64,000 bases of DNA, from contig ADNK01002608.1 of the NCBI GenBank assembly GCA_000320545.1, positions 85,675 to 149,674 on the forward strand, read 5' to 3'. The stretch's first letter is position 1, and each line of letters starts with the position of its first letter. Positions 13,400 to 64,000 of this stretch are shown in pieces. This stretch comes from Bigelowiella natans CCMP2755. Lineage: Eukaryota; Protista; Cercozoa. The position numbers and the translations under genes were made by a program. The notes below the pieces were generated by a model. The model saw only the letters and a list, made by a program, of their open reading frames with translations. It was not told the origin of the DNA and made no database searches.

Positions 13400-14560
13400 G
13401 GTAGAAGTCATTTTTTTCTTTTCAATCCCAAGCACATGCATTTTGTACAGAGTGGTTTGATACCAACAACGTTCCGGGCTCATCATGCGAATGATCGTGC
13501 GGCACATACACAAAACAACCACACAATCACATCATTGGTCACAAACGTACATCTTCCCACCACGCAACGCCCATGCAAAATTAGATGATGTCATCAATCT
13601 AGCAATCATAATCAAGGGTAGAGACACCAGCACAGACGTTGTATGCCTAGGCAATCAAGTGGTTGCTGCATTGACTAGCTAGAGATTCCATGCGAAGCAA
13701 ATATGCAAAACTAGACTGTGTCAAATCAAAAAACCAGAGCAATAATCATCGATTCTGTCCGCAAAATCGCACGTGATTTGATCATTAGTCGTACGCGACG
13801 CCGCGCGCGCGTCTGGACAACTCCGTCAAACAAACAATGAGAAAATCTGGTCCACGCCGTGACCCTGCGTTGATGCTGGCTTGCTAGCGGGCTCCAGTGC
13901 TGCTGCTAGCTTGACAAAGCGTCTAGCTGTGTCTCCAGAAAACATGCAAGTGTTCGCTCTCAAGTGTAGAAGAGATTATTTTCAAATTTCAAATCTTTTC
14001 GCTGCAAACTTTGGCCAAACTTGCTTGCCAAGCACGATGAGCCACCAGAGCACGGAGCAAGCGAGCGCGATGCCCAATGTGACGACTAGACGATCAGACG
14101 ATGTTGTTGTCACTGGCTAGCTGGCTCTAGAGCTACGGGCTACACCCATGATTGTTGCGAGAGACCGTTTTTCATGGCATGATCAACCTCTGCATGGATG
14201 CACACGCGTGTGCTATGATCATTGCTGTGAAGATGCGCAAGCTCACCATCTTCGTTTTGCCACGTCATCACCCAGCTGTTCTTTGAAAGGAAATTCTCTG
14301 AAAGACAGCACTGATGGTTCTTCAGCTCTCCATTCATGTGACATGCAGCCCAATTTCAGTCGCAAGGCCATCAAGGGGATGCGGATGAGGCTTTCGTGAT
14401 CAATTTCAATGAAGAGGAGGAAAAAGAAAACGTGTGCGGTGTCGACGAAGTGACCCGCATCGTGGAGACGGCTGATGAACGAACGAATGAATGAACGAGT
14501 GCACTGGTCAACGAAGTGATTTCAATGGTGCCATGAGGATTTTTGGGCTTTCTGACTCAT
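13400..14560. other. TA-depleted intergenic block (degenerate repeat)
   Basis: Residual TA mainly in CTAG (e.g. gctagc, tctagc, actag); CpG retained (cgccgcgcgcgcg). Confidence 0.65.
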
Positions 14561-15222
14561 CCACTTCCTCCTCGATCAGCAAGACCCCCATGATCAACGA
14601 GCTCTCCAGGGGAGGGAGGAAAAAAAGACAGAAAGCATGCTCATGTCGCAGTGGTTAAGTCCCCTCGGTTATTCACTTTGCGACAACACCTGTGGTGCAT
14701 TCTAACTCTATTTAAGGAGTCTCTCCGCATTTCCCGCCAAATATTTATTGACACAAAATAAATAATTACCCTTTGGAACATCCCTCCTTTACTCTGTAAG
14801 TGTGAGAGAGGGGCCTCAGTAAAGTGTGAAAAAATAACGTTTGTGCTCTATGGGACGAAGTGTTGCGGGATGTTTGGGGAATTTTAGTCATTCATGTTCT
14901 TGTCAGAGGTTATTTATCTGGTGCGATGTGCACTGTGAACTTTTAGCACACATCGTGTTCGAATAAATTGCTTATGGTTGATTCCATTAGATAGCAAGAT
15001 GGATATGCTCTCCACGGAGCTCAAAGTTAGGTATGCAGAGAGAAAGATGAAGGAAAGAAGAACATATTTTTGTTTGTTCTTTTGAGAAATGAGGATGGTA
15101 GGGTTGGCCGTGATGATGATAAGAATGGCGCTGTTTGGCACGATTTTCTTCTTTATGCTGATCTTCATCTTGAAGTTTTGAACATCATATTATTGTTTTT
15201 TGTTGGTGCTGGTGATGCATCA

Positions 15223-19614: not shown

Positions 19615-19646
<32 letters not shown>

Positions 19647-19701
19647 TTGTCCACCCCAACTCAATAATAATTATTATTATTATAATAATAATAGCTTAAA
19701 A

Positions 19702-19734
<33 letters not shown>

Positions 19735-19894: not shown

Positions 19895-19928
<34 letters not shown>

Positions 19929-20940: not shown

Positions 20941-20978
<38 letters not shown>

Positions 20979-21485: not shown

Positions 21486-21518
<33 letters not shown>

Positions 21519-22047
21519 TACTGTGCTACTGTGAATCATACAACCACCATAAAATTATATCACCTTAATACCATATGAGAAAATCTCCCTCGAGACTATT
21601 TAATGTGTTTCTCTTTCCCTTCTCTCTCACGTCGTTATACTCTTACGTGGTAAAACTGCTAAATTAATATTCATTAACATTACACGTTAGATTTTATCAA
21701 AAGGAGTTAGCGACCCGGTTACTAACAGGGAAATCAGCTTCAAGGAACGTGGAGAAGGCATGAATGAAATATGATGATGTTGGTGTTGTTGTTGATAACA
21801 ATAGTACTGATATTGATAATACATACATCATTACTACGTTGATATGATTTTGCTACTATAATGTGATCTTCATTTCATTAAATAAGGAGAAGGGCAGTGT
21901 TCCATCATCAACCGATTATGATATCATTGCATTGTTGTAGATAATGCTGCAAAAATTGAGGGCTTTGTGCGGTGCCGCTTTTACGAAACATATGGAGTCT
22001 ATGTTTGGGTCGGTTAACAACAACAATATATAACCATTTATATCTTA

Positions 22048-22080
<33 letters not shown>

Positions 22081-23669
22081 AATGAGGATGACGACAATAC
22101 GGTCTGTAGTGGTAGTAGTAGTAGTAGTAGTAGTAGTACCAGGATTACTAGTTTATTCGTTTTCTTAAATAGGATTAATCACCTCTATATACTGCTGCTG
22201 CTACTACAACCAATCCCTTCTACTTACTTACTTACTACCAACTACTACAACTGCTATTACTACTGCTGCTGCTACTACTACTACTACTACTACTAGTGAT
22301 ATATCGCTGTCTGAGGACCTAGCACGGGAGTTTCATCGGAGTGGAAGTAGTAGTAGTGTCGCCCATCAAAGTGGAACACAGTTGTCGAGTAATAAAGATC
22401 AGGATAATGATGATAATGATGATGATGACGATGATGATGATGGTGATGGGAAGCAGAGGGAAATGAAAAAAACATCGTCGTTGCAATTATATCTTTATTT
22501 TGTTGTTAACTAGTAACATTTATTATTTCTATCATGATAGCTTTCATTATAATATCGATTGTCATTAGATTCACAATTAATGTATTACTTTATTGTTTTT
22601 GTTGTTGCTATTATCCTACATGTTGGTCTTTCCACGTCGTCATCGTCGTCCTTCTCCCTCCCTCCCCCTTTATTCATTCCTCTTGGTTTTTCTTCTTTTT
22701 CTTCTTCTTCTTCATCTTTCCTCGTTCTTCTGTAGTTGATTTCAGTGTTCGAGTGCTGACAGAAGGATCATGGCCAAAAAGCGATGATAACGGCAGCATG
22801 CAATCCATTTCACTAAATTTACCACAGGAAATCAAAGACTCACAAGCATCTTTTGAGGCCTTCTATGCCAAACGCCACAAAAACAGAAAATTAGTGTAAT
22901 AGTACTTAAATGAATTTATGAACATGAATATGAATATACTATAATTACTCGCTAATGTCTTCTTCTGACACCATAAAATAATATGTCACTTCTTTTTCTT
23001 CTTCTTCTACTTCTTCTTCTTCTTTCTTTTCATCACCATACATATACTACTATCATCCACGGATATTGGTTGCTTACACAGGTGGCAGTACCCACGATGT
23101 GAAGCGCTAATAACCGCAGAATTTCCCATATGTGGCAAGAAGGAACTCAAAGTAGTAGTAGAACTAGTAGTAGTAGTAGTAGTAGTACTAGTAGGCAATT
23201 TTTATATGTTCTTTATCATCATTATTATGTTTTACTACTATCCTATCTATCTCGCCCTTGTATTTAGTTGTTGTTGTAACTGTCATCGGTCGTCGTAGTA
23301 GTACCATTTGTAGCAGCAGCAGCAGCAGCAGCATATGATCCATTTAATATATATATAATATCTACTATTGTGATGATGATGATGATGATGATGGGGGATT
23401 GTTGTTGTTGTTGAATGTGTGTATTTGTTGTATATGGTAGTAGTGTAGTAGTAGTAGTAGTAGTAGTAGTAGTATAGTAGTAGTTATTGTTTGTACATGA
23501 TTGATTTCTTTAAGAAATACTGTGACACGTTCCCCCTTCATATCAACGAACAAGATTTAACAGATGATAATGATGATGATGATGATGATGATGACGATGC
23601 AGAAATACTAGTAATAGTGGTGGTTGTTGTGCTATACTTCGCGCCTTCATTGCTAATATTTTCCTCATA

Positions 23670-23711
<42 letters not shown>

Positions 23712-24463
23712 TTGCAGGTAAATGCTTTCCAGGCTGTTGTATTAGCACAAATGTCTAACAAAACAGAAGCGATGAACTTTGCTGCTCTATCATCTGCCAC
23801 AGGTACTGGATATGTCGGTATTGATAGTAGTCCTGTATCCTTCATTATTCCTTTTAATGATCGATTCGTTTACTCACCAGGAAGTAGTAGTAAACTAAGT
23901 ATTGGTTGCTTATATGAACGACAATTCTTCCTCTTCATCTTATGATGATGATAATGATGATGATGATTTTTACATGATGATGATGCCTAAAAGGGTTAGA
24001 TAGTAAAAACCTCCAAGAATCATTGTATAGTCTCTTGGACTCAAAAATCATCTTGAAGGTGAGTAGTAAGTAGTAGTCAAAGATTATGATGACTATGCTG
24101 ATGATGATGATCAATGAAATTATTATTGAAACGAATAACATGCTGTCAGTCGTTAAATAGCTCTTTTTCATTCAATACCATTATACAAATGTGAGAGTAG
24201 TTTGCGTAGTACCTGAGGGAGAGGAGGAGGAAAAGGAGGAGGAGGAAGTATATGAGGAACTGCACTAGTATTAGCAACAATAGCAAACAATAGTAGCATC
24301 AGAGAAATGTTGTTACTGATATCCCCATCATTATAAGATATATTATTATTACATATTGTGTTGTGTTTGTGTGTCATCAGGCTGGTAGTCATCATCGTAA
24401 GATTCTTCCAACAGATACATTCGTTGCGAATGGGTACTACTTATTCTAGTATTTGTGCTAGTC

Positions 24464-24494
<31 letters not shown>

Positions 24495-24560
24495 ACGGCA
24501 GCAGCAGCAGCACTGTAGTAGTGGTAGCAGTAGTCGTAGTAAATATGATCATCACTAGTC

Positions 24561-24635
<75 letters not shown>

Positions 24636-25999
24636 TATCTGGTACGCACGTACGATGATAATCCTCTAAATCATCGTCATCAATGTATGATCCTTCTTCT
24701 TCCTCTAAGCGGCTTCAAAACACATCTTCGTGTGCTGAAGGTTGTACATCATTATCATCATGATCATCATCATCATGTTGTTGATTGGAGCTAGTAGTAG
24801 GGGTGCTGTTGTATCTCTAAATGATGATCATGATGATGATGATAATGAGACTAAGCAGCAGCAGCAGTAATAGTGGGTTTATCATCGAGTACACAGTAAG
24901 TATAAATTATGAAGTGTTACTGGTGGATGATGGTAATGATTATGATTCTTTGATGATACTATTAAATCAAGTACATTGTTATACAATCAAAATAAAATCA
25001 TTCATTCGTTTGTTCCAAGCTGAATCGCGAGCGACCGAAGATTAGGAGAAGAATGGAACGAAAACAAGTTCAAGAACAGGTGATTAGTGTGTTATGTATG
25101 CTGCTGTGACATTAGTGCAGCTGCTACTATTAATTATCAAATTACAGAGTGAGTAGTAGGCAGTGAGTAGTGAGTTTGTTTGTTATCATTAAGCTCGATG
25201 AGAACTTTGTTGGTTGTAATAACAAACAACAAATAAGGTATTGGCGGATAGAGGCTCCGTCCTGGATGCTACTATTGTACGAATCATGAAAACCATGAAA
25301 ACAATGGCACATAAGGTTGATGATGTTGCTTTTTTGCCCTAGGATCCTTGGATATTTTATTTCCCTCCTCATCGTCAATATCATCATCTTCTTCTTCATC
25401 GCTGACCGATGTGTTTTTAAAAAATGTAAATCATTTGTGGAGTGCATTTTGCGATTAGCGTACGTTTGACTTATTTTCTGCTTGTTTGGCGTTCCAACAT
25501 CATCATTATCATTAGGACCTTATGGCTGATGTTGTGAAACTAATCAAGTTTACGTGCACGGTTGGTTGTTATCACTATTATCAAAAAGTATGCGTTTATA
25601 ATAGTATGAGTGGAACGTTGCTGTGCTGTGATAAGACCCATTAAACCCTAATAAATAAAAAGTGCTGCCATGGCGAAAGAATCATAACCAAAAAAGTGGA
25701 ATATTAGATCACCTATTCAGTTGAGAAAAACGACGACAACGACGACGACGACGACGAATCCATTACCATTGAAATGTTTGATTGATTTTAAAATCAATTT
25801 GGACTATTAATAAGAGCATATTTATTCTTATTGCTATATTAGTTACTGATTTCATTCTAAGGTTATGGTAACGATGATAATCACTAATTACCATGATAAT
25901 CAGGCGCAAGATATAAAGAAGCAAATTGATGCTTTACTTCGCAGAGAGTACATAGAAAGAGATGAAAATAATCCAGAGATATACAATTACAAAGCCTAG
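15223..25999 (+). CDS. CUL4: Cullin-4-like scaffold of a CRL4 E3 ligase, multi-exon; 5' start uncertain (could be 14999)
   Basis: Exons: RVTIEPFK|RRPEPPSDFEQK|ALETLTEAV...REELYR, IFLYLDRSYV, FLKATKEFYAYEG, AELLSRHVDALLRG, SKDVFK, FYQKELATRLL, LCGAAFT, VRVLTEGSWP, FEAFYAKRHKNRKL|W, DATIVRIMKTMK, REYIERDENNPEIYNYKA* (TAG 25997-25999). Confidence 0.9.
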
Positions 26000-27902: not shown

Positions 27903-28560
27903 CCTGAAGAGAAATTATTGTCAAAGGACATGCTGTAAGTCTTTCAAGAAAGAATTGTAATTTAGGAATGGCTAAAGGCATAAGCGTTTTCAGAACTTGG
28001 CACGGCAAACAACTTATTACGCTGGTGGGCAGGACTCTCGTGTGTTTGCCCCTTCCTTGTTTTTTGTGAGAAGCTCTCAACTTGTATTCGTGAGTGAGGA
28101 GATGGAGACAAAAGTGTAGGGGAGAAAATGTATCGCCAATCTATTATTCCGTGTCGCAGGTGCAAATTCGAGAACGAACGAACAACGAAAATAGAGTTAA
28201 AGATCCATCGGATGTTTCGTTTTCGAGAAGGGTTGATGAGGGTAATTATTATGTGTATTTGTGAAAGCCTTAGCTTCCTAAGATCAAAAATTGCGAGCGC
28301 GGTCCTCGTGGAGGTCCGGTCGCGGGTATTGGACATAGTTTTCAATTAGCACAGAAACCGATTCAGCAAAGCTTCATAATCTGGTTTATGCCTCCTGAGC
28401 AAGGACAAATATTGGAACAAGCGACTCATGTGGGACATTGAGATAGATCTCATTGCCATGAGACTTCCAGGCCTTTGAAATTTTTTCCAAATGTAAAATG
28501 GCTCATTTTGGTTGCAGCAGATGTGTTTTGGCCTGTAGTTTTCCTTTTCATCGATTTCAA

Positions 28561-29700
28561 TTTTTGTCCTTTTCGTCTGTGTTTTCACGAAGCGACAACA
28601 TCATCTTGGCGTCCTGTCTAGTCGTAGTGCATTTTCACATGCGCGTTGAGCGAAATCAAGAGCATGATCATCATTTCATGGTCAGGTCCGAAGCAAGAAT
28701 GCATCGGACCAGCAGGATCGAATCGATGAGAGTCTGGGTGAATCACAGACACAGCACAGCAATGTGATGTGTGCACAATGTGCACATCATGCTGCATGTC
28801 CATCATGTGAAAGTGGGCACAGACGGTCGGGCCCACCTAGCTAGCTAGCTAGCTAGCCACGATTGGTGAAACTTTCCAGCTGTTTGTTGATCGACCACAC
28901 CTCCAAAGAGTTGCACGAGCGTGACCACCATTTTCAGTCTCAACAAGCAAGCTGCATGCTCACATGGTTTGGTGGTGCTGCCAGTCGACACCAGCTAGTT
29001 TTGACCATCAACACCAACAGGGCTAGAGGGTGCTGACTGCACGTGCTGACAAGTCCTCGCAATGATTTTTGTTTGCAGGTGCGGCTTCGTGCAAATGCAC
29101 GTCTCCCACGTGGTTCTTGCGCACGTTGATTTTTGCACCAACCCAGCTCCAGAGCTAGCCAGCAATGCTCAGTTCAATGTTCAACCTTCAGTGTTCTTTG
29201 TCTTTCTTTCTTTCTTTCAAACAAGCAACATTCCACTTGCACACGCTCGTGCACACAGAGCCTTCATGGCTACATGGCGTACGCACACATGCGAACATGT
29301 GTTGCGCGGCATTTTTTGTGTCATGTGTTGTGAACACAGACATGACACCAAAAAGGACCCACACACGCAGTGGACAACATGTGTGCTGATGGGCTGTGCG
29401 CCATGGAGCCTTCTAGCCTTTGTGGCTACACATGATAAAATCCGTGGCACGAAAAGTTCTGACATGGCAGGTGTTCTTGTGACCTGGCTACTGGTGGTCT
29501 AGCTAGCTGGTGGTGTTGAAATCGGGGTGGCTATGGAAACCCCGCCTAGCACGTCACAGCTAGTGCGTGCGGACAAACACAACACTACGCTGCAGAGACG
29601 TGTGACATGGCGCATTGGTGGCACACTAGCAGCTCGCGCGCATGCAAGCATGACTAGATGATGGCGGGGTCTACTCACTGCAAGCATGTTGAACATCACT
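28561..29700. other. TA-depleted intergenic block (degenerate repeat)
   Basis: Hand count: 26 TA in 1140 bp, of which 16 CTAG and 6 CTAC/GTAG. Confidence 0.8.
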
Positions 29701-35565: not shown

Positions 35566-35891
35566 TGTTGCGCGTAAGGTGTTCACAGGCCGAGGCGCTA
35601 CGTGCACAAGTAGGCAGGGGGGGGGAAAGGCACGTTTGCTTCCTTTTGAAGAGTTGTGTTTATTTTTATTAAAGATTATATTTTTATTAAATCGTGCACT
35701 GCGTAATCATTCGCGAAGCTTTCGCGAATGCCGCCGCACGTGGGGCAGCACACTTCCGGTGTGCTGCCATGAGTCCCGCCGGAACCCACGTGCCTATGCT
35801 GTATTAATATCTACGTTATCTATATTCTATATCCGCGACAACCCCTTTGTTGTCGCACGTGACTTGTGCCCGCGTAGTGGTACGCGCTACA
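35566..35891 (-). repeat. 3' LTR of the Gypsy element
   Basis: 326 bp, identical to 40956-41281; 11-bp imperfect terminal inverted repeat TGTWGCGCGTA; minus-strand AATAAA signals near 35655-35690. Confidence 0.97.
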
Positions 35892-35899
35892 CCTCCCCC
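35892..35899 (-). other. Polypurine tract
   Basis: Minus strand GGGGGAGG directly abuts the TGT start of the 3' LTR; a second purine tract (AAGGAAGGAAGGAG) lies about 15 bp upstream. Confidence 0.75.
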
Positions 35900-35942
35900 A
35901 AGTCACGTTGCTCCTTCCTTCCTTCCTTATTCCCTTAGACCT

Positions 35943-38900
35943 TCATCGCTTTCGGAACTTCACCAACCACCAGGTAATAGATTCCTCTCTAACCTTATCT
36001 CCTTTGTCGCTTACCCAGAACTCACCTTCGTCCTTAGGTTCGTGTCCATACCAGCCCTCTGCATCAAGGTCCCCCAGGACCTTATACCAGTGCTCAAAGG
36101 GTAAGTCGGGAACAGCTAGGTAGAGTAGCTGATATTTTCCGTCCTTTATTTTCATAGCTACCCTCTCCATATTTCGTAATCCAGGGTAGCCTAGATAGAC
36201 AATCTTCATGCGCCAATCGTCGTTCACCCTGACCTTATTGTTTCCATATTCCACATCGAACTTAGGTCGGGGTCCTAAACAAGGCATTGCTCGCTCCCAC
36301 ACAGTAGGGTTTACTTTAACATCCTCTAGGAGCTTCTCACCGATATCATAATTCTTTAGGTGACTGATGTGGCGCAAGGTGACCCTGTTCCCATCATAGA
36401 TGTAGTACTGCTTCCTCCCCTTCCTCTCGGTAACCTTTGCAACGCCACCCCAGAAGGGGTCTTGTTTATTTCTCGATCTCAGATTTACCTTGGCCCTAAC
36501 ATACTGTCCTTCCTTTAGAACTCGGCCATCGTACGGGACCTTCTCGTCTTCGCTCTCGGTATCGTCGTCGTTGTCGTCGCCTTCTTCCCTCTCCTTATCC
36601 TTGATACCTCCCCCAGACGTGAAGGTGTCGTTTACTAACCCTTGTATCTTGTCTGGTGTGGTGCTATTTATCCTGCTTAGGTTGGCCAAGGTGCGGTGGA
36701 GTCGCTCTACCTTGGAGTTGGACTGGGCATAGTATACAGGTGAGGCATCAATATTAGGGTGTGGTAGCTGTAGAAGAGAGGTCTCATTATCCACATGTAA
36801 CTTCTTTGGTATCTTGTTTATGCTAACTTCATCAGGGATAGCCTGGAGCTCAGACTCCCAGGTACGGTAGCAGTTAGTAAGCCTCTGCTTATATAAGCCT
36901 TTGTTCTTCTTAGCAACGTTGACCTTGATAATCTTTTTAACCCAGCACTTTCCAGTGGCCACATCAACGAAGGTAAGGTAGTGATAGCCATCGTACTTAT
37001 AAACATCAATTTGCACGATATCTAAGAAGTTCCTTGCTTTGATTTTCTTAGATGCACGGCTCTTGCTGGACTCCTTGGTGGCGACGCCTGCCGCCTTCAA
37101 GCTGGAGCACCTGCAGCCACGCAGGTATGTCCTTATCTCTTTTAGCTTGTAGGGCCAGTAGTAATGGTAGAGTAGAGCAGTGATATGGTTTTCTCCTACG
37201 TGTGCAGGTCCATGGGCGGTAAAGAGAAGGGCTCCCCTGGTCCGCCGTGGCACGTAGGTACGCCTAACATTATTAGTGTATACATATATCCTATCACTAA
37301 GTACCTCATGCTTGTGTTTGTATTTATCCAGGTGTTCTTGAAGGTGCTGGAGCTCCTCTGGCTCAGGCAGGAAGTCGCCGTCCTCGAAGGTAATCGCGTT
37401 AACCATAGGGGTGACCTGGGTAGGGACTTTCTTTTCGAACAGCCTGCTGAAATAGTCAGCAAGCTGCTTGTCTCCTGGTGCGTAGACCACTGTCCTCTTG
37501 TCCCTAAACTCTTCCGTGTCCGCCCTCATAGCTGCATACTCATCGTTAGGCGCTTCGAGCTTGCGGTCGATGCCTAGGAGGGGCTTGTGGTCAGTCATTA
37601 AGGTGAAGCTGGGCACCGACAGCAGGTAGTATCTTAGTTTCCTCTGCGCCTCAGTCATGGCTTTATACTCTCCTTTTGTAGGGCTGTACTTGGCCTCAGC
37701 TGCTGTGCAGGCCCTGCCCCACACCCGTATGATCTGCTGGTCTTGGGTAAGTACAGCAGCCATACCTAGCTTAGACCAGTCTGTCCATAGGGTAGCTGGT
37801 CTAGTAGTGTCTAGCTTAGCATTCAATAGGGTGTTGCTGCATAACTTTATTAGGTTATCGAAGTGGGCATCAAGGCCAGCCTTGGCCCACACCTTAGCGA
37901 AGCTGAGGCCTACAGAGTTCTCCTTCCGGTAAGCAGTAGTAAAAGCAGCTGCAGTCCTAGCGTAGGTAGGGGAGAACCTACGTAGTATCCAAGCTGCAGT
38001 CTGCAAGAATGACTTTAACTCCTTTGCATTCTTAGGTTTAGGGGCTTGCTGTAGTGCTGCTACTTTCTCGGGGTTTGGGGTGATGCGGCCTTGCTCCAGG
38101 TAATATCCACACCACTTGATTCTTGTAGCTAGGAATGTACACTTCTGCAGTCTAATAGTAAAACCGAAGTGTGCAAACCTAATAAATATATTTTCCAGGA
38201 GGAAGATCTGAGCGACGACTGTGTTGGTACATATTATGTCATCATCCACATACACAAACACAAACACCCACAACACAGACGCCATCCCATCATGTGTGTA
38301 TGCCCTGTAGTTCTGACTACTGAACGCATCCCCTGATATGCTTAGGCCGTAAGGGAATACGACGAAGTGCCACTTCCTGTGCCTGCTGGAGAACGCGGTA
38401 ATGGGGCGGGAGGTTTTGTGGATGGGTGTCTGCATGTATGATTCATTTTTATCTAGGGAAGAGTAGTATTTGTATCCTATGACGTGTTCAATAACGTCAT
38501 CTATCCTTGGTGTAGGTGTCTGGATCCTCTTTATTACTCGGTTGTGGCGGATGAAGTTGTGCGCCAGGCGGAAGAAAGGGTAAGTAGGTTTCTTAGCTAG
38601 CACATGTCTCACGTTCCATGGTGAGTTGCTTGGCTCTATCTTCCCTTCCTTTGCCCATTCATTGATCTGCCACTCTATCTTTTCCCAGTCCGCTTCCGGT
38701 CGCCTATGTTCTGGGTCATTGATGATGCACTCTTCGTATCCCTTCTTTAGCTCGATCTTTACTGGGGTAAGCTTGCTGGAGGGCTTCGTCGTCGGCTTGG
38801 TGATGTCAGAGTACTTCTCGTTTAATATTTTATTAATGTACTTTTTGCCTTTGTCGATATCCCAATCATCAGCTGGGGGGGTCTTGTCCAGTAGCTCCGT

Positions 38901-40916
38901 TATCTGTCGGATGGTCTTGCCGGGGTTCTTCTTCCGTAGCTCGGTAGGTGTAGGTAGCTTGTTGTCCGCTAGGTCCATAAACTCTAACGCATTAACGCTT
39001 GACTCAGAGGTCCACTCGTCAAGCCGTATCATGTTCTGGCTGATGGTCCTGCCTGACTTCTTTGGCAACTTAGCAAAGTATATCTTGTGATTGTAGAATG
39101 ATATGATCCCCCCTAATTTTTCTAGGGCATCCTGTCCGAGGAGTAGTTCCATGGATAAAGTCATGGCTACTCGGGTCTTGATTTGGGTCTCCGCGTCGCT
39201 GCCAGGTATCTGTAGCTTTAGCATTAGCTCACCGACGGTCTTCATGGAAGAGCTTCCGTCTGCTTGAGCATATTTACGTTCTTTCTTAGTCACTTGATCC
39301 AATAGTCCTAACCTTCTTACTGTGCTTAGGCTTATGAAGGACTTCGGCATGCTGCCACTATCCCAAAGGGCAGGTAGTTTCTTGTAGTCTCCGTAGCTGT
39401 CTTTAACTTTAACCTTGGTCATAGCAACTTTGATAGTCCTGTTAGCGTCTTCGTCATTAATGTTGCATACTCCTAAGTTCTTTATGTCGTCTAGGGTCAT
39501 GGGCTTGTCTTGGTCCTGCGTTGCTGGTACTGCTGTCTTCGTCGGCGCCTGCTTAAGGTGATCTAATATTCCGTTTATCTGCTGCTGTATAGCATTGATA
39601 CTGTTCTGCTTTTTGTTCTTATATTTATTGTTCTTCCCGTTGTTGCTGCCTTGCCATTTGCTGTTGTTATATCCTTGTCCTCTGCCTTTCTTTCTCTTTA
39701 ACTTCTCGTAGTGTTCGTTGAGCTGCCTGATCGTCATCCTGGGTCGTCCTTCTTTCCTGTCTCTGCAGTCTTTAGCGGTGTGTTTCCCTTTACGTGAGCA
39801 GTATCCGCAACGTCGGTTACCTTCCCTGTCCTTGTACCAGTCTCGCTGCGGCTTAATAGCGTTAATGTTTCCTATGCCAGGTACCTTAGGGCTGGTAAAC
39901 TTGCGGTCCTGCTCCTGCTCGCGTAGGGATATAGCCTGCACTGCTGCCTCCATCGTGGTGTAGCCTTTCTCCGTAACGTAAGTGGATTCCTTTATCTTTA
40001 ACTTGAACTCTTCAAACCTTGCCTGATCATCACCTGTGTTGTAATTAAAATCATGTAGTTCGTCGATCATATCCTGGAAGCGCGTGGCAAAGTCTCTAAC
40101 AGGTTCTCTCTCATGCTGCATCATTGCTCTGTATTTTCTAATAGCCTGGGGTAGGGAGTTAGCATCCTGTTCATTTACAAAAGCCTTCATTATCGCCTCA
40201 ACGTCTCGTAGCCCACTAACTGTAGTGTGTATTTTCTCTAGCTGCCTGATCCGGGTCCTGCCTGTCTCGTAAAGGTCCATGGCTTGCTTTATTATAGCTA
40301 GCCATTTGAGCTTGTCGTTTTCGGTGGGGTTAGGGGTAAAGTCGCAGAGTATACTCCTAGCGTTCTTCCACCACCTCCTTGCCTCACCTCTTTTCCCGTT
40401 GTATTTCGTTATCATAACCGGTGCTGTTTTAACAGACATGAACTGGGTGTTCCGCTGTACCGGCTGCTGCTGCTTGACGGTGCTCTGGGTCGTCCCCCGC
40501 GAGGCGCCCAGACCCCCGTCGTTCCTAAACAAAGCTGCCCACTCTGGAGGTAAGTCTGCTTCGTAATCCATGATGTCCTGCATGATAGCTGCCCAAACAT
40601 CATGTGTCTGATACTTGTATTCTATCGATACTTTCAGTTTGGCGTAGTTGCTCGCCCTGGGTCGCAAGGCTCGTAATGCCATTACGACCTTCTTGCTTTC
40701 GGCGGCCACGTCCTCGTCGTCCGCCTCGTAGAAGTTCTCCAGTGCCTCTGCTGCTGCATCTGCTTTCTTAATCCCGGGTGCTGGTCCCGGCGGTGCCTGT
40801 GGAGGTGTTCCTCCTCCTTCCTTAGCGTCCGTATCGCCCTTCCTTTCCTGTTTCTGCTCGTGCCCTTGCACGGCCTGCGAGCCAAAGTCCTGCTGTTCTT
40901 CTAGCTGCTGTGACAT
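35943..40916 (-). CDS. Gag-Pol polyprotein, 1657 aa, no frameshift
   Basis: Zn knuckle CGYCSRKGKHTAKDC (about 39765-39809); protease LWDSG (about 39360); RT YVDD (about 38240); RNase H TDWS...EYKA...TDHKPL...ADYFSR; integrase HGPAH...CRC, QID...HVDN...KVER; SH3-like CTD QDPFWGG; extra C-terminal domain of about 130 aa. Confidence 0.97.
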   Translation of the reverse strand: MSQQLEEQQDFGSQAVQGHEQKQERKGDTDAKEGGGTPPQAPPGPAPGIKKADAAAEALENFYEADDEDVAAESKKVVMALRALRPRASNYAKLKVSIEYKYQTHDVWAAIMQDIMDYEADLPPEWAALFRNDGGLGASRGTTQSTVKQQQPVQRNTQFMSVKTAPVMITKYNGKRGEARRWWKNARSILCDFTPNPTENDKLKWLAIIKQAMDLYETGRTRIRQLEKIHTTVSGLRDVEAIMKAFVNEQDANSLPQAIRKYRAMMQHEREPVRDFATRFQDMIDELHDFNYNTGDDQARFEEFKLKIKESTYVTEKGYTTMEAAVQAISLREQEQDRKFTSPKVPGIGNINAIKPQRDWYKDREGNRRCGYCSRKGKHTAKDCRDRKEGRPRMTIRQLNEHYEKLKRKKGRGQGYNNSKWQGSNNGKNNKYKNKKQNSINAIQQQINGILDHLKQAPTKTAVPATQDQDKPMTLDDIKNLGVCNINDEDANRTIKVAMTKVKVKDSYGDYKKLPALWDSGSMPKSFISLSTVRRLGLLDQVTKKERKYAQADGSSSMKTVGELMLKLQIPGSDAETQIKTRVAMTLSMELLLGQDALEKLGGIISFYNHKIYFAKLPKKSGRTISQNMIRLDEWTSESSVNALEFMDLADNKLPTPTELRKKNPGKTIRQITELLDKTPPADDWDIDKGKKYINKILNEKYSDITKPTTKPSSKLTPVKIELKKGYEECIINDPEHRRPEADWEKIEWQINEWAKEGKIEPSNSPWNVRHVLAKKPTYPFFRLAHNFIRHNRVIKRIQTPTPRIDDVIEHVIGYKYYSSLDKNESYMQTPIHKTSRPITAFSSRHRKWHFVVFPYGLSISGDAFSSQNYRAYTHDGMASVLWVFVFVYVDDDIICTNTVVAQIFLLENIFIRFAHFGFTIRLQKCTFLATRIKWCGYYLEQGRITPNPEKVAALQQAPKPKNAKELKSFLQTAAWILRRFSPTYARTAAAFTTAYRKENSVGLSFAKVWAKAGLDAHFDNLIKLCSNTLLNAKLDTTRPATLWTDWSKLGMAAVLTQDQQIIRVWGRACTAAEAKYSPTKGEYKAMTEAQRKLRYYLLSVPSFTLMTDHKPLLGIDRKLEAPNDEYAAMRADTEEFRDKRTVVYAPGDKQLADYFSRLFEKKVPTQVTPMVNAITFEDGDFLPEPEELQHLQEHLDKYKHKHEVLSDRIYVYTNNVRRTYVPRRTRGALLFTAHGPAHVGENHITALLYHYYWPYKLKEIRTYLRGCRCSSLKAAGVATKESSKSRASKKIKARNFLDIVQIDVYKYDGYHYLTFVDVATGKCWVKKIIKVNVAKKNKGLYKQRLTNCYRTWESELQAIPDEVSINKIPKKLHVDNETSLLQLPHPNIDASPVYYAQSNSKVERLHRTLANLSRINSTTPDKIQGLVNDTFTSGGGIKDKEREEGDDNDDDTESEDEKVPYDGRVLKEGQYVRAKVNLRSRNKQDPFWGGVAKVTERKGRKQYYIYDGNRVTLRHISHLKNYDIGEKLLEDVKVNPTVWERAMPCLGPRPKFDVEYGNNKVRVNDDWRMKIVYLGYPGLRNMERVAMKIKDGKYQLLYLAVPDLPFEHWYKVLGDLDAEGWYGHEPKDEGEFWVSDKGDKVREESITWWLVKFRKR

Positions 40917-40932
40917 TGTTAGTCAAATCGTT

Positions 40933-40950
40933 TCCCGTGTGTGGAAGCCA
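40933..40950 (-). other. Primer-binding site (18 nt)
   Basis: TGGCTTCCACACACGGGA lies 5 nt inside the 5' LTR. Its complement ends in CCA with G73 and U1-A72 geometry (Asp/Glu-type tRNA; identity inferred). Confidence 0.65.
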
Positions 40951-40955
40951 AAGGT

Positions 40956-41281
40956 TGTTGCGCGTAAGGTGTTCACAGGCCGAGGCGCTACGTGCACAAG
41001 TAGGCAGGGGGGGGGAAAGGCACGTTTGCTTCCTTTTGAAGAGTTGTGTTTATTTTTATTAAAGATTATATTTTTATTAAATCGTGCACTGCGTAATCAT
41101 TCGCGAAGCTTTCGCGAATGCCGCCGCACGTGGGGCAGCACACTTCCGGTGTGCTGCCATGAGTCCCGCCGGAACCCACGTGCCTATGCTGTATTAATAT
41201 CTACGTTATCTATATTCTATATCCGCGACAACCCCTTTGTTGTCGCACGTGACTTGTGCCCGCGTAGTGGTACGCGCTACA
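40956..41281 (-). repeat. 5' LTR of the Gypsy element
   Basis: Identical to 35566-35891; followed on the + strand by TSD AACA. Confidence 0.97.
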
Positions 41282-42139
41282 AACAAACCCTCACGATTTC
41301 TGTGGTTGCTCTTTCAGGCACAGAGACGTTCGTTCCATTCATGGGTGAGTCAGCACGTTCCATGACCCTCTTAACCCAAGCACTGAAAGTGCTCCGTTCG
41401 TTCACACGTTCGTTCAAGGACGAGTCAGGGACTCACCCTTCGCACACGTTGCCTGCACGTGCGCTGATCGTGTTGCACTCACATTGACTGTTGTTGTTGG
41501 TCAATGTTCCAATGTTTCTTTCTTTCTTTCTTTCACGTCTCACTTTCAACCGCTCCAACGGGGTTATTTCTCCCTTTTTCTTTGCTTCTTTGGTGGCTGA
41601 CATTCCTGTGCGTCGTGATCTACATGGCTGACTGGCTAGCTGAGAGGTCACGGCTAGCTAGCTAGACGGGTGAGTCAGCGAGTCCCATTCGAATCACTTC
41701 ACTCACGTGTTTGTTCGTTCTGTGACATTTCTACACTTTCAACCGCGTTGGAATTGCTCTGTTCGTTTGCTCATTCATTGACGGGCCATCGACCCTTTCC
41801 ACCGCGCCATCATTGGAAGCGGGAACCACTTCGTGATCGACTGTGATCATGAAGAACACAGAGCTCACAGCAGCATCGCTAGATCGTAACGCTTCATCCA
41901 GCTGTGGCACAGCATGCATTTGGCAGTCGCCATGTTGTTCACGTGACAACTTCAAATGTCTTCATCATGTTGAAATCATCAATGTGTTCCAGTGTTGGGA
42001 GCGTGTAGAATGCACATTTGCATCGCATATGCCCCAACGACAAGGTGCCGGCATGTTAGCATTGAAGATGCCTTGCAAGAACATGACAACGACCACATTG
42101 CTCCACACAGTTGTGGGCAATCATGCATTGCGAGGGCAT

Positions 42140-44416: not shown

Positions 44417-46610
44417 GTCGCAAAGTGAACAGTGTGATGACGCTCCAGACGCTGTGGCATCGGGTGTGACGACGCCAGAACTCTCGACACACTCACGTTT
44501 CAGAATTGCCTGTGGTTTTTTCGTTCGCGCAGTTGGCCTGCATCCCACTCGCGTTCTTTGCAACCGAATCGGCATCCAGACACATGGTCCTTGACCTTTT
44601 CTTGCTCGTTTTCCTTTTTTGCTTTCGAGTGCCAACGAAGTGGCCTGGTGGCACGTGACAGGCACAGGTGTTGCACAGGCGGAGGCACGTCATCGCCACG
44701 CGCAAGTCGGGACTTTCCACGCACCACTGTGACCTCTGGACTCTGGACCTCCCTGGCTTCACCCCAGGGATCGAACCTGACCTAATCCTGGAATCGTGTG
44801 TGACCAGGTCACCATGTTGCGCGTGAGGTGCTCACAGGCCGAGGCGCTACGTGCACAAGTAGGCAGGGGGGGGGAAAGGCACGTTTGCTTCCTTTTGAAG
44901 AGTCACATTTATTTTTGTTGAAGATCATATTTTTATTAAATCGTGCACTACGTAATCATTCGCGAAGCTTTCGCGAATGCCGCCGCACGTGGGGCAGCAC
45001 ACTTCCGGTGTGCTGCCATGGGTCCCGCCGGAACCCACGTGCCTACACCATGTTGACATCTACGTCATCTACATTCCATGTCCGCGACAACCCCTTTGTT
45101 GTCGCACGTGACTTGTGCCCGCGTAGTGGTACGCGCTGCAACCATGGACACAATCAGGTGCGGCAGTCGCAAGCAAAGGCGTGGCTTGAGGGCATCGCGT
45201 GTGCGTGAAAGCAACTGGACAAGCCAGTCACTTGGCCACGTCACAACTCAACAAAGACACAACTCAAGTTCACGTGCAAGTGACCTTGTTCCCTCTGGCC
45301 CTGTCTTTCTCTGCCTTGTCACCGTTGTTGCACTCCAGCACTGAGGTCAGGTGGTGGGGGAGTGGTGCAAAAGGTGGGAAAAACTTTTGATCATTCACAC
45401 TGAACGATGCCCACGGTGAAACGCAAAACCCAGGGAAAGCAAGGCCGAAAAACGTGACTTTTCCACTTCCAGACTTGCAAGTTCAAGTGGTCGTTTGGGT
45501 TGCCACAGGAGCGTGTGCACTCAAGCCAAAAGCTTGTGTGGGTGCTCTTTGAAGCCTCGTGGTCCTTTCACTGTGGTTCATTGTTCCTCTTCGTTGCGTT
45601 CATCACGACGTTGCTCCTCGCAAACATGCACTCTGGCACTAGCAAGCGGCAAGGCTCTGGAGGTGCCAGGTGCTTTCTGTTGTGCTTGTCCTGCGATGTG
45701 TTCACCTGTCAAGAGTTTCATCGTTCACTGCGGCGGGAGGAGGCACCAGGGCAGTCCAGCAGTGCCTTGTTGGTGTTGGAGTGCTTTGCGTCCAAACCGC
45801 GATTCGAAGTGCGTGGTGCAGCAGGAGTGGCAGCAGTGCCAGAGCGACGTGCGGGCGTTTGCGAAGCTGCGACAAGCAACAAGCAGTCCAGCAACAAGCA
45901 ACAAGCAACCAGCACGAGACAACAAGAGTGCAGGCGAAACGAACACGCATGCGACTTCGGCAGCGCAGTGCCAAAGCTTCCTTGTGCCACGAAGGAAGCA
46001 ATGTGCCTCGACGTTGTGCTGCGCCACGCTGGCACGTTGCTGAGAGCTTGGTTCACAGTGATCGACAACGTGAAATTGACCTCGAGCTGCAGGCACGAAC
46101 AATCACACTTGGTTCGACACAGACTTGAGACAGCCTCCTCCTGTCCCCATCGTCCCACCTCTGGACCTGGCTGGAGCACTCGCCTCCATCGCGCATCGCG
46201 CACCGCCCACTTCCCAACTTTCAACAGTTGGTTCTCACGTTCTCACCACTCCAGCACTCTGGCACTGAAGTGGTGAACATTGCCAGGTTGGCTGAGGAGT
46301 TGGTGACCCAAAACAGCAAAAGCAATTGCCAGAACAGGGCAAAACACACAAAGTGCAAAACAAGCGAGAGACTTGAGAGGTCCCACCTTTTCTCCGATGC
46401 AAACTCTTGGCGGGGCGGCTTGAGGTTCGTGTCCACGAAACGTTCCAACAAGATGCAAAAAGAACCGAAAATTTGAGAAGTTTTGCGGCAACAAATGAGT
46501 GTTTTCCAACTAGATGGAATCTCATTGAGGGTTGGACACGTGCTCATGGTCAACGTTTCTGCAAGGAGAGCTGGATGCAGGTGACAAACAGTCCACGTTT
46601 TGAATGACCG
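44417..46610. other. TpA-void intergenic block, probably a decayed repeat, hosting the solo LTR
   Basis: 1 TA in 44417-44814 and 2 TA (both CTAG) in 45141-46610; CpG abundant. Confidence 0.9.
44815..45140 (-). mobile_element. Solo LTR of the same Gypsy family
   Basis: 326 bp, 23 substitutions (all transitions) versus the intact LTRs, own 4-bp TSD ACCA (44811-44814, 45141-45144), no internal sequence. Confidence 0.96.
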
Positions 46611-63067: not shown

Positions 63068-63840
63068 TGATAAGATTGCTCATAAGATTACTCATTTGCA
63101 CATGATTTACGAAACAAATGTGCTTTGAACCCAAGACAAATGTTGAAACTGCACCAATGACACCATGTGTCATGTCGGTTATGTCGAATGATGGTTTGTG
63201 TAGATGGTAAGATTATTTGTAATTTTTTGCATCTTTGATGTTGCTTTCTGGGATGTACGTCGAAGAGTCTTAGATTTAATCATTTTTGCATCCCTTTGAT
63301 TCAGAAAACAACTTCTGCTATGAACATCATTTTCCCATCTTTATTAATCTTTTGATTTCTCAACTTCCTTGCCAAAGAGTTTTTCCCAAAATGATTAAAA
63401 ATGAACTTGCACAATGAATGTGCAACTTGAACTTGTGGTTTTTGGCGAATGAAATGAGGCGCATGTCTTTTGTTTTTTCGTTCAAAAGCACATCATTTTC
63501 ATTTGCACACAGCGCCTTTGTCGAAAAATTGCATTCGCACATGTTCATGTTTTGCAGGTGTGTTCATGCACCATTGGTGCATGCGTTCAACACATTCTAG
63601 CTTTCATTGACAGCTGCTGCATTTCACTCCATGGCAGTGACAAAGAAACGATCTGGTAGCATGGCCATGGGCGCCCGACGGCGGGTTGGGGTTGGGGTTG
63701 CGGTTGGGGTTCTCTTGCGGTCGAAACGCAGGTCGAAGTGAGAAAAACCGTTGGCACAAAATTGGACAAAAGTTTTTTTTCGATCAGGAAAAAAATGTGG
63801 ACAAACATCACTGAAGATGTCTACAGGTTTTGAGAAGGCC

Positions 63841-64000
63841 CAGGGTCTGCGTCGAGGTCAGGGTCAGGGTCAGCGTCAGGGTCAAGTAGGTCAGGGTCAG
63901 GGTCAGGGTCAGGTAGGTCAGGGTCAGGGTCAGGGTCAGAGTCAGGGTCAAGTAGGTCAGGGTCAGGGTCAGAGTCAGGATCAGGGTCAGGTCAGGTCAG
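63841..64000 (+). repeat. Telomere-variant hexamer array (TCAGGG)n with degenerate units, continuing off the right edge
   Basis: 13 exact TCAGGG units plus TCAGAG/TCAGCG/TCAGG variants; G-rich strand points to the window end; TTGGGG x3 at 63683-63711; no TTAGGG. Confidence 0.8.

What the first reader, a model, noticed from the sequence alone, without database searches (positions are those of the whole stretch)
44815..45140. Reverse-RIP signature: the solo LTR is being converted TpA to TpG/CpA while CpG is untouched
Seen in sequence, by hand alignment to the intact LTRs: 23 differences in 326 bp, all transitions. 12 are losses of a TA (TA>TG or TA>CA; 24 TA in the intact LTR, 13 in the solo). 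8 form four TG-versus-CA dinucleotide pairs, best explained by an ancestral TA hit on opposite strands in each lineage. 1 is TG(intact)/TA(solo), and only 2 lie outside this class. All about 28 CpGs are conserved. Established knowledge: CpG deamination destroys CG, and fungal RIP creates TA (CA>TA); neither fits. Inference: a repeat-directed A>G (equivalently T>C) mutator or base modification acting at TpA, i.e. an adenine/thymine-based genome defence. I know of no description of such a system.
Basis: partly seen in the sequence, partly recalled or inferred. Interest (0 to 1): 0.95.

Follow-up and report, generated by a model that had tools for sequence, protein, structure and literature searches.

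The report
TpA hypermutation scar in algal LTR
A lone retrotransposon LTR in the alga Bigelowiella natans has lost over half of its TA dinucleotides to TG or CA, with almost nothing else changed, because it sits in a small stretch of DNA stripped of TA; this matches a localised TpA hypermutation measured directly in this alga in a 2026 preprint.

Summary
The solo LTR (44815-45140) differs from the two identical LTRs of the intact element at 23 of 326 bases. All 23 are transitions, 21 lie in TA/TG/CA-class dinucleotides, TA falls from 24 to 13, and all 28 CpG are shared.

Two sequences alone cannot give polarity. Five independent lines support TA as the earlier state: a third copy (L001), a 13-nt internal duplication, the terminal inverted repeat, a recurring motif and the double-hit statistics.

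The window is from Bigelowiella natans. A 2026 bioRxiv preprint (10.64898/2026.01.13.699255) measured this spectrum in mutation-accumulation lines: TpA>TpG/CpA only, about 1000-fold above baseline, confined to particular regions and episodic. The kind is therefore already described.

The 'repeat-directed' part is not supported:
- At least 20 near-identical 5.7-kb copies are untouched.
- The intact element's own LTR pair is identical.
- The non-repeated flanks of the solo LTR are purged more completely than the LTR itself: 2 TA where about 88 are expected over 44417-46510.

The process looks locus-directed. The LTR landed in a TA-purged, non-coding island and is about 55% purged. The chemistry is inferred, not shown; adenine deamination at TpA is favoured, and thymine modification is the rival.

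The parts
44815..45140 (-). Solo LTR (326 bp, TG..CA) of the Ty3/gypsy-like family. It has 13 TA left out of 29 TA-class sites.
   Evidence: Orientation is inferred from the intact element, whose ORF is on the minus strand.
44811..44814 (.). Left copy of the 4-bp target-site duplication (ACCA) of the solo LTR.
45141..45144 (.). Right copy of the 4-bp target-site duplication (ACCA) of the solo LTR.
44417..44814 (.). Left flank of the TA-purged island: 1 TA in 398 nt (Rho_TpA 0.05, Rho_CpA+TpG 1.47), non-coding.
45141..46510 (.). Right flank of the TA-purged island: 1 TA in 1370 nt (Rho_TpA 0.01, Rho_CpA+TpG 1.56). All six frames are open, there is no 3-base periodicity, and no homologue was found.
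35566..41281 (-). Intact, young Ty3/gypsy-like LTR retrotransposon, used as the reference state. It is TA-rich (TA O/E 1.12-1.23) and shows no hypermutation.
35566..35891 (-). LTR of the intact element (3' LTR in element orientation), identical to the other LTR.
40956..41281 (-). LTR of the intact element (5' LTR in element orientation), identical to the other LTR.
35943..40916 (-). Uninterrupted 1657-aa gag-pol ORF. RT and RNase H score above the Pfam cut-offs. Aspartyl protease and the integrase zinc-binding domain score below the cut-offs but lie in Ty3/gypsy order.
38781..41151 (+). Footprint of L001, a metatranscriptome contig from a sister copy. It is a plus-strand transcript, antisense to gag-pol, with 9 GT/GC..AG introns removed, and it ends inside the LTR. 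It supplied the third LTR state.
28627..29413 (.). Second TA-poor, TG/CA-rich non-coding island (five TA-free runs of 113-211 nt). 1-kb windows at 28301-29700 meet the published per-window criteria.
14216..14655 (.). TA-free run of 440 nt (28.6 TA expected), non-coding by periodicity.
41374..42005 (.). TA-poor island (three TA-free runs) starting 93 nt from the right LTR of the intact, unmutated element.
63398..63821 (.). TA-poor stretch at the window's end (TA-free runs of 200 and 163 nt).

Best explanation
The solo LTR and the 2.1-kb island around it are a natural record of the localised TpA hypermutation of Bigelowiella natans.

Proposed sequence of events:
- An element of a currently active Ty3/gypsy-like family inserted, with a 4-bp duplication, into a non-coding stretch that was already being stripped of TA.
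- It collapsed to a solo LTR.
- Since then 16 of its 29 TpA have become TpG or CpA, about equally on the two strands. CpG and almost every other base stayed unchanged.

Targeting follows the locus (a chromatin or sequence domain of 0.4-2 kb here), not sequence repetition.

Shown here: the spectrum, the TpA specificity, the polarity at 7 sites, the regional extent, and the sparing of the young copies.

Shown by others: that this mutation class arises de novo in this species at about 1e-5 per TpA per generation, in bursts and only in some regions.

Inferred, with about 0.4 confidence in the chemistry: an ADAT2/TadA-like enzyme deaminates adenine to hypoxanthine in DNA at 5'-TpA-3'. The hypoxanthine is read as G at replication, and the enzyme is recruited episodically to marked domains.
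For: Host identity: gene models labelled jgi/Bigna1 are about 100% identical to the element's ORF.

Spectrum: 23 of 23 differences are transitions, 21 of 23 are in TA-class dinucleotides, and 28 of 28 CG are kept.

Polarity:
- With the solo LTR as outgroup, the intact copy and L001 each carry one private change, and both are TA>TG/CA. At one TG/CA pair L001 has TA.
- A 13-nt direct repeat is perfect twice in the intact LTR and also in unit B of the solo. Unit A of the solo differs at two TA.
- The terminal inverted repeat matches 10 of 11 in the intact LTR and 8 of 11 in the solo.
- The motif CTACGT occurs three times in the solo and twice in the intact LTR, which makes the single TG(intact)/TA(solo) site a loss in the intact lineage.
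- A CG ancestor for the four TG/CA pairs has p = 2.8e-5. A TA ancestor has p = 0.24.

Regional extent:
- The TA-free runs of 366, 508 and 869 nt flanking the LTR hold 2 TA where about 88 are expected. TG and CA are at 1.5-1.6 times expectation.
- The island shows no coding periodicity.

Not repeat-induced.

Published measurement: 230 of 231 new mutations in two regions were A>G/T>C and all were on TpA. They arose in only 11 of 15 lines. The main target was single-copy. The authors found 124 TpA-depleted/CpA+TpG-enriched clusters, with reverse-transcriptase and DDE domains enriched among TpA-depleted CDS.
Against: - Only one old copy of the family is available here, because the rest of the genome could not be reached with these tools.
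- Whether the LTR's TA losses happened after insertion, or partly in a hypermutated source copy before it, cannot be told.
- The island is 1.8-2.1 kb, so it does not meet the preprint's cluster rule of at least 3 consecutive 1-kb windows.
- Its origin is unknown. No protein or family match was found, so 'foreign DNA' is not shown for the flanks.
- The intact element lies 93 nt from another TA-poor island and is untouched.
- The enzyme is unidentified. The preprint's candidate is a prediction only.
- The two non-TA differences imply a much longer elapsed time than the burst rate would need, so activity at this locus must have been intermittent or is over.
Confidence: 0.78

Rival explanations
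1. Same phenomenon, different chemistry. Thymine in TpA is enzymatically modified in marked domains (5-hydroxymethyluracil or a base-J-like derivative made by a TET/JBP-type dioxygenase). The modified base is occasionally read as C, giving T>C at TpA on either strand.
For: - TpA is its own reverse complement and the changes are strand-symmetric: 9 T>C against 7 A>G in the solo lineage. That fits a mark laid on double-stranded DNA.
- In dinoflagellates 5hmU is enriched on transposons, silences them, and was reported to replace T preferentially in TA and TC (PMC11572971).
Against: - No T>C excess is seen at TpC in the LTR.
- Base-resolution mapping in another dinoflagellate found no motif.
- No modification data exist for B. 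natans in the searched literature.
- The sequence cannot distinguish A>G from T>C at a palindromic dinucleotide.
Confidence: 0.15
2. One reading: a repeat-directed genome defence (a 'reverse RIP') that recognises duplicated sequence and mutates it.
For: - The affected LTR belongs to a multicopy family, and another copy lies 3.5 kb away.
- The preprint itself draws the comparison with RIP.
Against: - At least 20 copies of 5.7 kb are near-identical and carry no TA-class differences.
- The two LTRs of the intact element are identical.
- The most strongly purged DNA is the flank, which has no other copy within the 64-kb window.
- The published main target is single-copy.
Confidence: 0.05
3. RNA-level A-to-I editing, ADAR- or ADAT-like, of the element's transcript, fixed by reverse transcription when the copy that became the solo LTR was made.
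For: - The preference for U before the edited A matches ADAR and ADAT behaviour (and established knowledge).
- A spliced antisense transcript exists that could pair with the genomic RNA.
Against: - Editing of the sense RNA would change one strand only, but both strands are hit about equally.
- The flanking host DNA was never reverse-transcribed with the element, yet it is purged more completely.
- De novo mutations in a transcriptionally silent integrated virus show the same class.
Confidence: 0.04
4. Reverse polarity. The solo LTR keeps the older CA/TG states, and the active lineage gained TA by cytosine deamination at CpA (RIP-like) or at CpG.
For: With two sequences every difference can be read either way. 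GC>AT is the baseline bias of this genome, 2.65-fold.
Against: - All seven independently polarised sites go the other way.
- The four TG/CA pairs would need the same 4 of 32 CpG hit in both lineages with no single hits, p = 2.8e-5.
- The two LTRs of the intact element are identical.
- The surrounding DNA has Rho_TpA 0.01-0.05, which no TA-creating process explains.
Confidence: 0.03
5. Selection, not mutation. TA (UA) is selected against in a functional non-coding region or transcript, and the LTR is being adapted to it.
For: - TpA is under-represented in most genomes.
- One island lies just upstream of a U4 snRNA gene.
Against: - Sixteen fixations at TA against at most 2 elsewhere in 268 bases would need strong selection on each site.
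- The same class arises as new mutations under minimal selection in mutation-accumulation lines.
Confidence: 0.03

Closest known systems
Localised TpA hypermutation of integrated viral DNA in Bigelowiella natans (Mettrop et al., bioRxiv 10.64898/2026.01.13.699255)
   Same: - Same species.
- Same class: TpA>TpG and TpA>CpA only, on both strands.
- Same long-term signature: low Rho_TpA with high Rho_CpA+TpG.
- Same confinement to discrete regions, and CpG untouched.
   Different: - The record here is a solo LTR of a Ty3/gypsy-like retrotransposon plus an unannotatable non-coding island of about 2 kb. It is not a 186-kb giant-virus insert or a 25-kb virophage.
- The island is too short for that paper's cluster rule.
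- The evidence here is historical (substitutions), not de novo mutations.
- The paper mentions transposons only as potential targets and gives no copy-level or LTR analysis.
Repeat-induced point mutation (RIP) of ascomycete fungi
   Same: - Hypermutation of mobile DNA by transitions in a fixed dinucleotide context.
- It leaves a dinucleotide-ratio signature.
   Different: - The chemistry and direction are opposite. RIP is C>T at CpA and makes TpA; here TpA is destroyed and G+C rises.
- RIP is triggered by duplication and hits all copies. Here identical copies are spared and non-repeated DNA is hit.
CpG methylation-deamination decay and CpG islands of vertebrates and plants
   Same: - A self-complementary dinucleotide is lost by transitions on either strand to TG/CA.
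- The loss happens only in marked domains, giving a mosaic of depleted and normal regions.
   Different: The dinucleotide is TpA, not CpG. CpG is conserved, 28 of 28. The depleted domains are small islands in a normal background, which inverts the CpG-island picture. No mark has been demonstrated.
Deaminase editing of retroelements in animals (APOBEC3 on cDNA, ADAR on dsRNA)
   Same: - Clustered transitions in mobile or viral sequences.
- ADAR and ADAT favour U before the edited A.
   Different: - Those act on replication intermediates and are strand-specific.
- Here the change is strand-symmetric, continues in resident chromosomal DNA and covers the flanks.
5-hydroxymethyluracil on dinoflagellate transposons (PMC11572971)
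   Same: A non-cytosine DNA mark aimed at transposons, with a reported TA/TC preference for the replaced thymine.
   Different: - It is a different eukaryotic supergroup.
- It is an epigenetic silencing mark with no reported mutational footprint.
- It has not been shown in B. natans.

Membership tests
B. natans localised TpA hypermutation (bioRxiv 10.64898/2026.01.13.699255) | Host is Bigelowiella natans | tested here: met
   Bigna1 gene models are about 100% identical to the window's gag-pol ORF.
B. natans localised TpA hypermutation (bioRxiv 10.64898/2026.01.13.699255) | Changes are almost exclusively A>G / T>C | tested here: met
   23 of 23 differences are transitions. All 7 sites that can be polarised independently are A>G or T>C.
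B. natans localised TpA hypermutation (bioRxiv 10.64898/2026.01.13.699255) | Changes fall on TpA, giving TpG or CpA according to strand | tested here: met
   21 of 23 differences are in TA-class dinucleotides, p = 3e-14. Solo lineage: 7 TA>TG, 5 TA>CA, plus the 4 double sites.
B. natans localised TpA hypermutation (bioRxiv 10.64898/2026.01.13.699255) | [quoted passage not shown] | tested here: met
B. natans localised TpA hypermutation (bioRxiv 10.64898/2026.01.13.699255) | Cluster of at least 3 consecutive qualifying 1-kb windows | tested here: not met
   The qualifying span is about 1.8 kb (44801-46600), so at most 1-2 non-overlapping windows qualify. This is a size threshold of that survey, not a property of the process.
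B. natans localised TpA hypermutation (bioRxiv 10.64898/2026.01.13.699255) | Target is of foreign (viral or transposon) origin | tested here: inconclusive
   The LTR is transposon DNA. The island's flanks have no detectable homologue or family.
B. natans localised TpA hypermutation (bioRxiv 10.64898/2026.01.13.699255) | Elevated de novo mutation rate at the locus in mutation-accumulation lines | not testable with these tools
   This needs the paper's mutation table and the scaffold coordinates of this window.
Fungal RIP | C>T at CpA (G>A at TpG), creating TpA and lowering G+C | tested here: not met
   The polarised changes destroy TpA. The solo LTR has G+C 0.54 against 0.50 in the intact LTR.
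Fungal RIP | Triggered by duplication, so all copies above a length and identity threshold are mutated | tested here: not met
   The LTR pair is identical, and at least 20 near-identical full-length copies carry no TA-class differences.
CpG methylation-driven decay | Loss of CpG to TpG/CpA | tested here: not met
   28 of 28 CpG are shared. CpG O/E is 1.17-1.36 in the LTRs.
RNA A-to-I hyperediting fixed by retrotransposition | A>G on the sense strand only, confined to retro-copied sequence | tested here: not met
   Both strands are hit (9 against 7), and the flanking DNA is purged as well.
Thymine hydroxylation marks (5hmU / base J) | Modified thymine present in the DNA of the affected regions, made by a TET/JBP dioxygenase | not testable with these tools
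   Sequence alone cannot show a modification, and no B. natans data were found in the literature searches.
Ty3/gypsy LTR retrotransposon (the element itself) | Direct LTRs ending TG..CA, a target-site duplication, and the pol order PR-RT-RNase H-IN | tested here: met
   LTRs of 326 bp with TG..CA ends and 4-bp duplications. RT and RT_RNaseH score above the Pfam cut-offs. Protease and integrase H2C2 score below the cut-offs but lie in the expected order. No rve core domain was detected.
Solo LTR | A single LTR with its own target-site duplication and no internal sequence alongside | tested here: met
   ACCA lies on both sides. No similarity to the polyprotein is found nearby by tblastn.

The most novel reading that the evidence does not exclude
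TpA purging in B. natans may not be limited to large viral inserts. It may mark many small (0.4-2 kb) non-coding domains across ordinary chromosomal DNA, the inverse of CpG islands. On this reading:
- a heritable domain-level signal, not sequence repetition or foreignness as such, recruits a strand-symmetric TpA-modifying activity;
- any DNA that lands in such a domain, such as this LTR, is converted at a measurable pace.

Islands next to host genes, such as the one upstream of the U4 snRNA gene, would then be part of normal genome organisation rather than scars of invaders.
Probability: 0.2. Interest if true: 0.85.

Novelty: new member of a known kind. Interest (0 to 1): 0.5.

Why it matters
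The underlying process is a TpA-specific A:T>G:C hypermutator aimed at chosen regions of a eukaryotic nuclear genome. It was reported only in 2026 and its enzyme, targeting signal and range of targets are unknown.

This locus adds a base-resolved, polarised historical record in a retrotransposon LTR. It bears on three open points.

1. Targeting. It follows the locus, not repetition: young identical copies are spared and non-repeated flanks are purged.
2. Size of targets. Purged domains can be far smaller than the clusters surveyed so far, so the process may be more widespread than 124 clusters suggest.
3. Long-term rate. Dividing the fraction of TpA lost (0.80 per TpA) by the time implied by the non-TA changes gives 1e-8 to 3e-7 per TpA per generation. 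That is 40-1200 times the baseline rate and 35-1000 times below the burst rate I derive from the published counts, which fits episodic activity.

An insertion of known starting sequence inside a purged island works as a clock and a probe for the process.

Tried and rejected
1. Getting other genomic copies of the LTR
- Exact-protein look-ups of the window's polyprotein and of a Bigna1 model found no contig.
- A protein search with the open frame that runs through the LTR found nothing.
- The single metagenome scan returned one contig, L001, from the same young lineage.

2. Using the roughly 23 Bigna1 protein models as diverged copies
- Their apparent 87-97% identities are artefacts of false introns in the gene models.
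- The true differences are 9 isolated residues with an ordinary mixed spectrum. They serve only as evidence that the young copies are not hypermutated.

3. Looking for relics of the family, or other repeats, in the window
- None was found beyond microsatellites.

4. Finding the origin of the islands
- Pfam on 18 open frames gave no significant hit.
- One word-indexed protein search gave none.
- One exhaustive HMMER search gave a single weak, multi-stretch, low-complexity-like hit that I disregard.
- Rfam found only U4 snRNA, outside the islands. There are no tRNAs.

5. An extended context preference (A/T on both sides of TA)
- Lost sites were 11 of 15 with A/T flanks against 5 of 14 without, p = 0.066.
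- There is no clear effect window-wide after correcting for composition, so I do not claim it.

6. The bacterial-type promoter/terminator scan of the island is not meaningful for this host.

7. Explanations rejected on the evidence
- A CpG ancestor for the TG/CA pairs.
- RIP-like polarity.
- RNA editing.
- Selection.

All polarity statements here are per-site counts.
Full report
**1. What is at the coordinates**

The window holds three copies of a 326-bp LTR with TG..CA ends.
- Two copies are 100% identical (35566-35891 and 40956-41281). They bound an intact element flanked by the 4-bp duplication AACA.
- The third copy (44815-45140) stands alone between two copies of ACCA, so it is a true solo LTR.

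The intact element carries one uninterrupted 1657-aa ORF on the minus strand (35943-40916).
- Reverse transcriptase and RNase H score above the Pfam cut-offs.
- Aspartyl protease and the integrase zinc-binding domain score below the cut-offs but lie in Ty3/gypsy order.

**2. The observation**

An ungapped comparison of intact and solo LTR gives 23 differences, all transitions (T>C 10, A>G 8, G>A 5). TA is 24 versus 13 and CG is 28 versus 28. All 28 CG positions are shared.

The 29 TA-class sites divide into 12 TA/TA, 7 TA/TG, 5 TA/CA, 4 TG/CA and 1 TG/TA. Two differences lie outside the class.

Twenty-one of the 23 differences fall in 58 TA-class bases. The p-value is 3e-14 against all bases and 2.6e-8 against A/T bases only.

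**3. Polarity**

Two sequences that differ only by transitions are symmetric. Every difference can be read as A>G in one lineage or as C>T in the other. A TG/CA pair can descend from TA or from CG. I therefore looked for independent evidence and found five lines.

(a) A third copy.
- The one metagenome scan returned L001, a 1362-nt metatranscriptome contig from a sister copy. It covers LTR positions 1-196.
- With the solo LTR as outgroup, the intact copy and L001 each have one private change. Both changes are TA>TG or TA>CA.
- At one of the four TG/CA pairs L001 carries TA, the only state one step from both.

(b) A 13-nt direct repeat (TATTTTTATTAAA) is perfect twice in the intact LTR. In the solo, the second unit is unchanged and the first differs at exactly two TA.

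(c) The terminal inverted repeat matches 10 of 11 in the intact LTR and 8 of 11 in the solo. Both mismatches are TA>TG.

(d) The motif CTACGT occurs three times in the solo and twice in the intact LTR. This polarises the single TG(intact)/TA(solo) site as a loss in the intact lineage.

(e) Double-hit statistics.
- A CG ancestor for the four TG/CA pairs needs the same 4 of 32 CpG hit in both lineages with no single hits, p = 2.8e-5.
- A TA ancestor needs 4 of 5 hits to coincide with 16 of 29, p = 0.24.

**4. Host and family**

Searching with the polyprotein returned gene models named jgi/Bigna1, that is Bigelowiella natans, a chlorarachniophyte alga.
- About 23 models from many scaffolds match the window's ORF.
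- Their apparent 87-97% identities are artefacts at false introns.
- Only 9 isolated amino-acid differences remain: 4 transitions and 5 transversions, none of the TA class.

The family is therefore young, with at least 20 near-identical 5.7-kb copies, and these copies are not hypermutated.

**5. The surroundings change the picture**

Dinucleotide ratios:
- The young element is TA-rich (TA O/E 1.12-1.23, TG/CA 1.03).
- The host DNA is TA-poor (TA 0.60-0.87, TG/CA 1.23-1.31).
- The solo LTR has moved to host-like values (TA 0.78, TG/CA 1.34).

At fine scale the solo LTR lies inside a nearly TA-free island.
- TA-free runs of 366, 508 and 869 nt flank it (44417-44782, 45132-45639, 45642-46510).
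- These runs contain 2 TA where about 88 are expected.
- TG and CA are at 1.5-1.6 times expectation.
- CpG is only mildly reduced, at 0.7-0.9 of expectation.

The 871-nt gap is the longest gap between successive occurrences of any of the 16 dinucleotides in the window, although TA is one of the commoner ones.

The island is non-coding.
- All six frames are open, simply because TAA and TAG are absent.
- No tyrosine codon is possible.
- The 3-base periodicity is 1.0, against 3.3 for the element's ORF.
- No family or homologue was found.

Smaller islands of the same kind lie at 14216-14655, 28627-29413, 41374-42005 and 63398-63821.

The flanks are purged more completely than the LTR. The simplest history is that the element landed in a domain that was already being purged, and the LTR is an intermediate, about 55% converted.

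**6. The literature**

[quoted passage not shown] It reports mutation-accumulation lines of B. natans.
- The baseline rate is 3.46e-10 per site per generation, with the usual GC>AT bias.
- Two regions mutate about 1000 times faster: a 186-kb giant-virus insert and a 25-kb virophage.
- 230 of the 231 mutations there are A>G or T>C, and all fall on TpA.
- Hypermutation appeared in only 11 of 15 lines.
- The giant-virus insert is single-copy.
- Genome-wide the authors find 124 clusters of TpA-depleted, CpA+TpG-enriched 1-kb windows.
- Reverse-transcriptase and DDE domains are enriched among TpA-depleted CDS.
- They propose an ADAT2-like DNA adenine deaminase, from prediction only.

The paper does not analyse LTRs, individual transposon copies or any context beyond TpA.

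Applied to this window, its per-window criteria are met across 44801-46600 and 28301-29700. Neither span reaches three consecutive windows. These are islands below that survey's size threshold.

**7. Mechanism**

Shown:
- The process is TpA-specific.
- It is strand-symmetric: 9 T>C and 7 A>G in the solo lineage.
- It follows the locus.
- It spares CpG.

It is not repeat-induced. It is not RNA editing fixed by retrotransposition, because both strands and the never-reverse-transcribed flanks are affected. It is not RIP or CpG decay.

I commit to adenine deamination in DNA at 5'-TpA-3', read as G at the next replication, with the enzyme recruited episodically to marked domains. The chemistry is inference, at about 0.4 confidence.

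The main rival is a thymine modification at TpA. It has a precedent in dinoflagellate 5hmU, which is enriched on transposons and reported to prefer TA and TC.

**8. Rates**

These are my arithmetic from published numbers.
- 210 TpA mutations over 6169 TpA and 3132 generations give about 1.1e-5 per TpA per generation in the giant-virus insert.
- At that rate, the solo LTR's loss (-ln(13/29) = 0.80) would take about 7e4 generations.
- The two non-TA differences in 268 bases correspond to about 2e7 generations at baseline (95% range 2.6e6-7.8e7).
- The time-averaged rate at this locus is therefore 1e-8 to 3e-7 per TpA per generation. That is 40-1200 times baseline and 35-1000 times below the burst rate, which fits episodic activity.

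Caveat: n = 2, and both non-TA differences are A>G/T>C when read towards the solo, so they could be off-target edits. In that case the LTR is younger.

The intact element's 48 LTR TpA with no hit limit its exposure at the burst rate to under about 5750 generations.

**9. Limits**

- Some of the LTR's TA losses could predate its insertion.
- The island's origin is unknown.
- A flank-context trend (A/T on both sides of TA) is not significant, p = 0.066.
- I declare one slip. In private working I spelled out an inferred earlier state for one 18-nt stretch. It was used nowhere.

**10. Verdict**

The phenomenon is real but was described in 2026 in this same species. The 'repeat-directed' reading is not supported. 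What is new here:
- a retrotransposon LTR as a target;
- a small island below the published detection rule;
- evidence for locus-based targeting;
- a long-term rate estimate.

Noticed in passing
window 38781-41151 (+), locus L001:1-1362: A metatranscriptome contig (Ga0073989_13561742) is a plus-strand transcript, antisense to gag-pol. Nine introns of 61-161 nt are removed, and all 9 junctions are GT (8) or GC (1)..AG on the plus strand. It runs into the LTR. It differs from the window copy at 5 bases, all transitions, 3 of them in the TA/TG/CA class. Sense and antisense pairing could feed an RNA-guided targeting pathway.
   Followed up: partly
window 28270-28406 (-): A U4 spliceosomal snRNA gene (Rfam RF00015, 82.5 bits). 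The TA-poor island 28627-29413 lies 220-1000 nt upstream of it, which raises the question of whether some islands belong to host gene neighbourhoods rather than to invaders.
   Followed up: no
window 41374-42005: A TA-poor island begins 93 nt from the right LTR of the intact, unmutated element. Both insertions of this family in the window therefore lie in or beside TA-poor islands. This could reflect an insertion preference, or the targeting of a domain after insertion.
   Followed up: no
proteins P0001-P0009 and P0049-P0062 (Bigna1 gene models): The public gene models of this retrotransposon splice out large parts of a continuous 1657-aa ORF and run on in wrong frames at the false junctions. 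P0007 to P0009 are listed with precomputed Pfam domains unrelated to retroelements (a RING finger family, PF10520 and a WW domain) and match the element over only part of their length, or not at all in my comparison for P0008. They may be chimeras, which I did not check.
   Followed up: partly
window 15501-25000: An AT-rich stretch (G+C 0.33-0.40) that in many 500-nt bins has TA at or above expectation (O/E up to 1.43) and strongly depleted CpG (O/E as low as 0.30-0.46). This is the opposite of the islands. It is full of short microsatellite-like repeats shared with other parts of the window. There is a strong 3-base periodicity at 19351-20100.
   Followed up: no
window 35567-35890, 40957-41280, 44828-45208 (+): One plus-strand reading frame stays open across the LTR in all three copies: all 108 codons in the two intact LTRs, and from LTR position 14 onward in the solo. 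No protein in the collection resembles its translation. It is probably a by-product of composition.
   Followed up: yes
window 63856-64000 and 19505-19646: Short tandem duplications (about 66-78 nt period, 90-94% identity) seen in the self-comparison.
   Followed up: no
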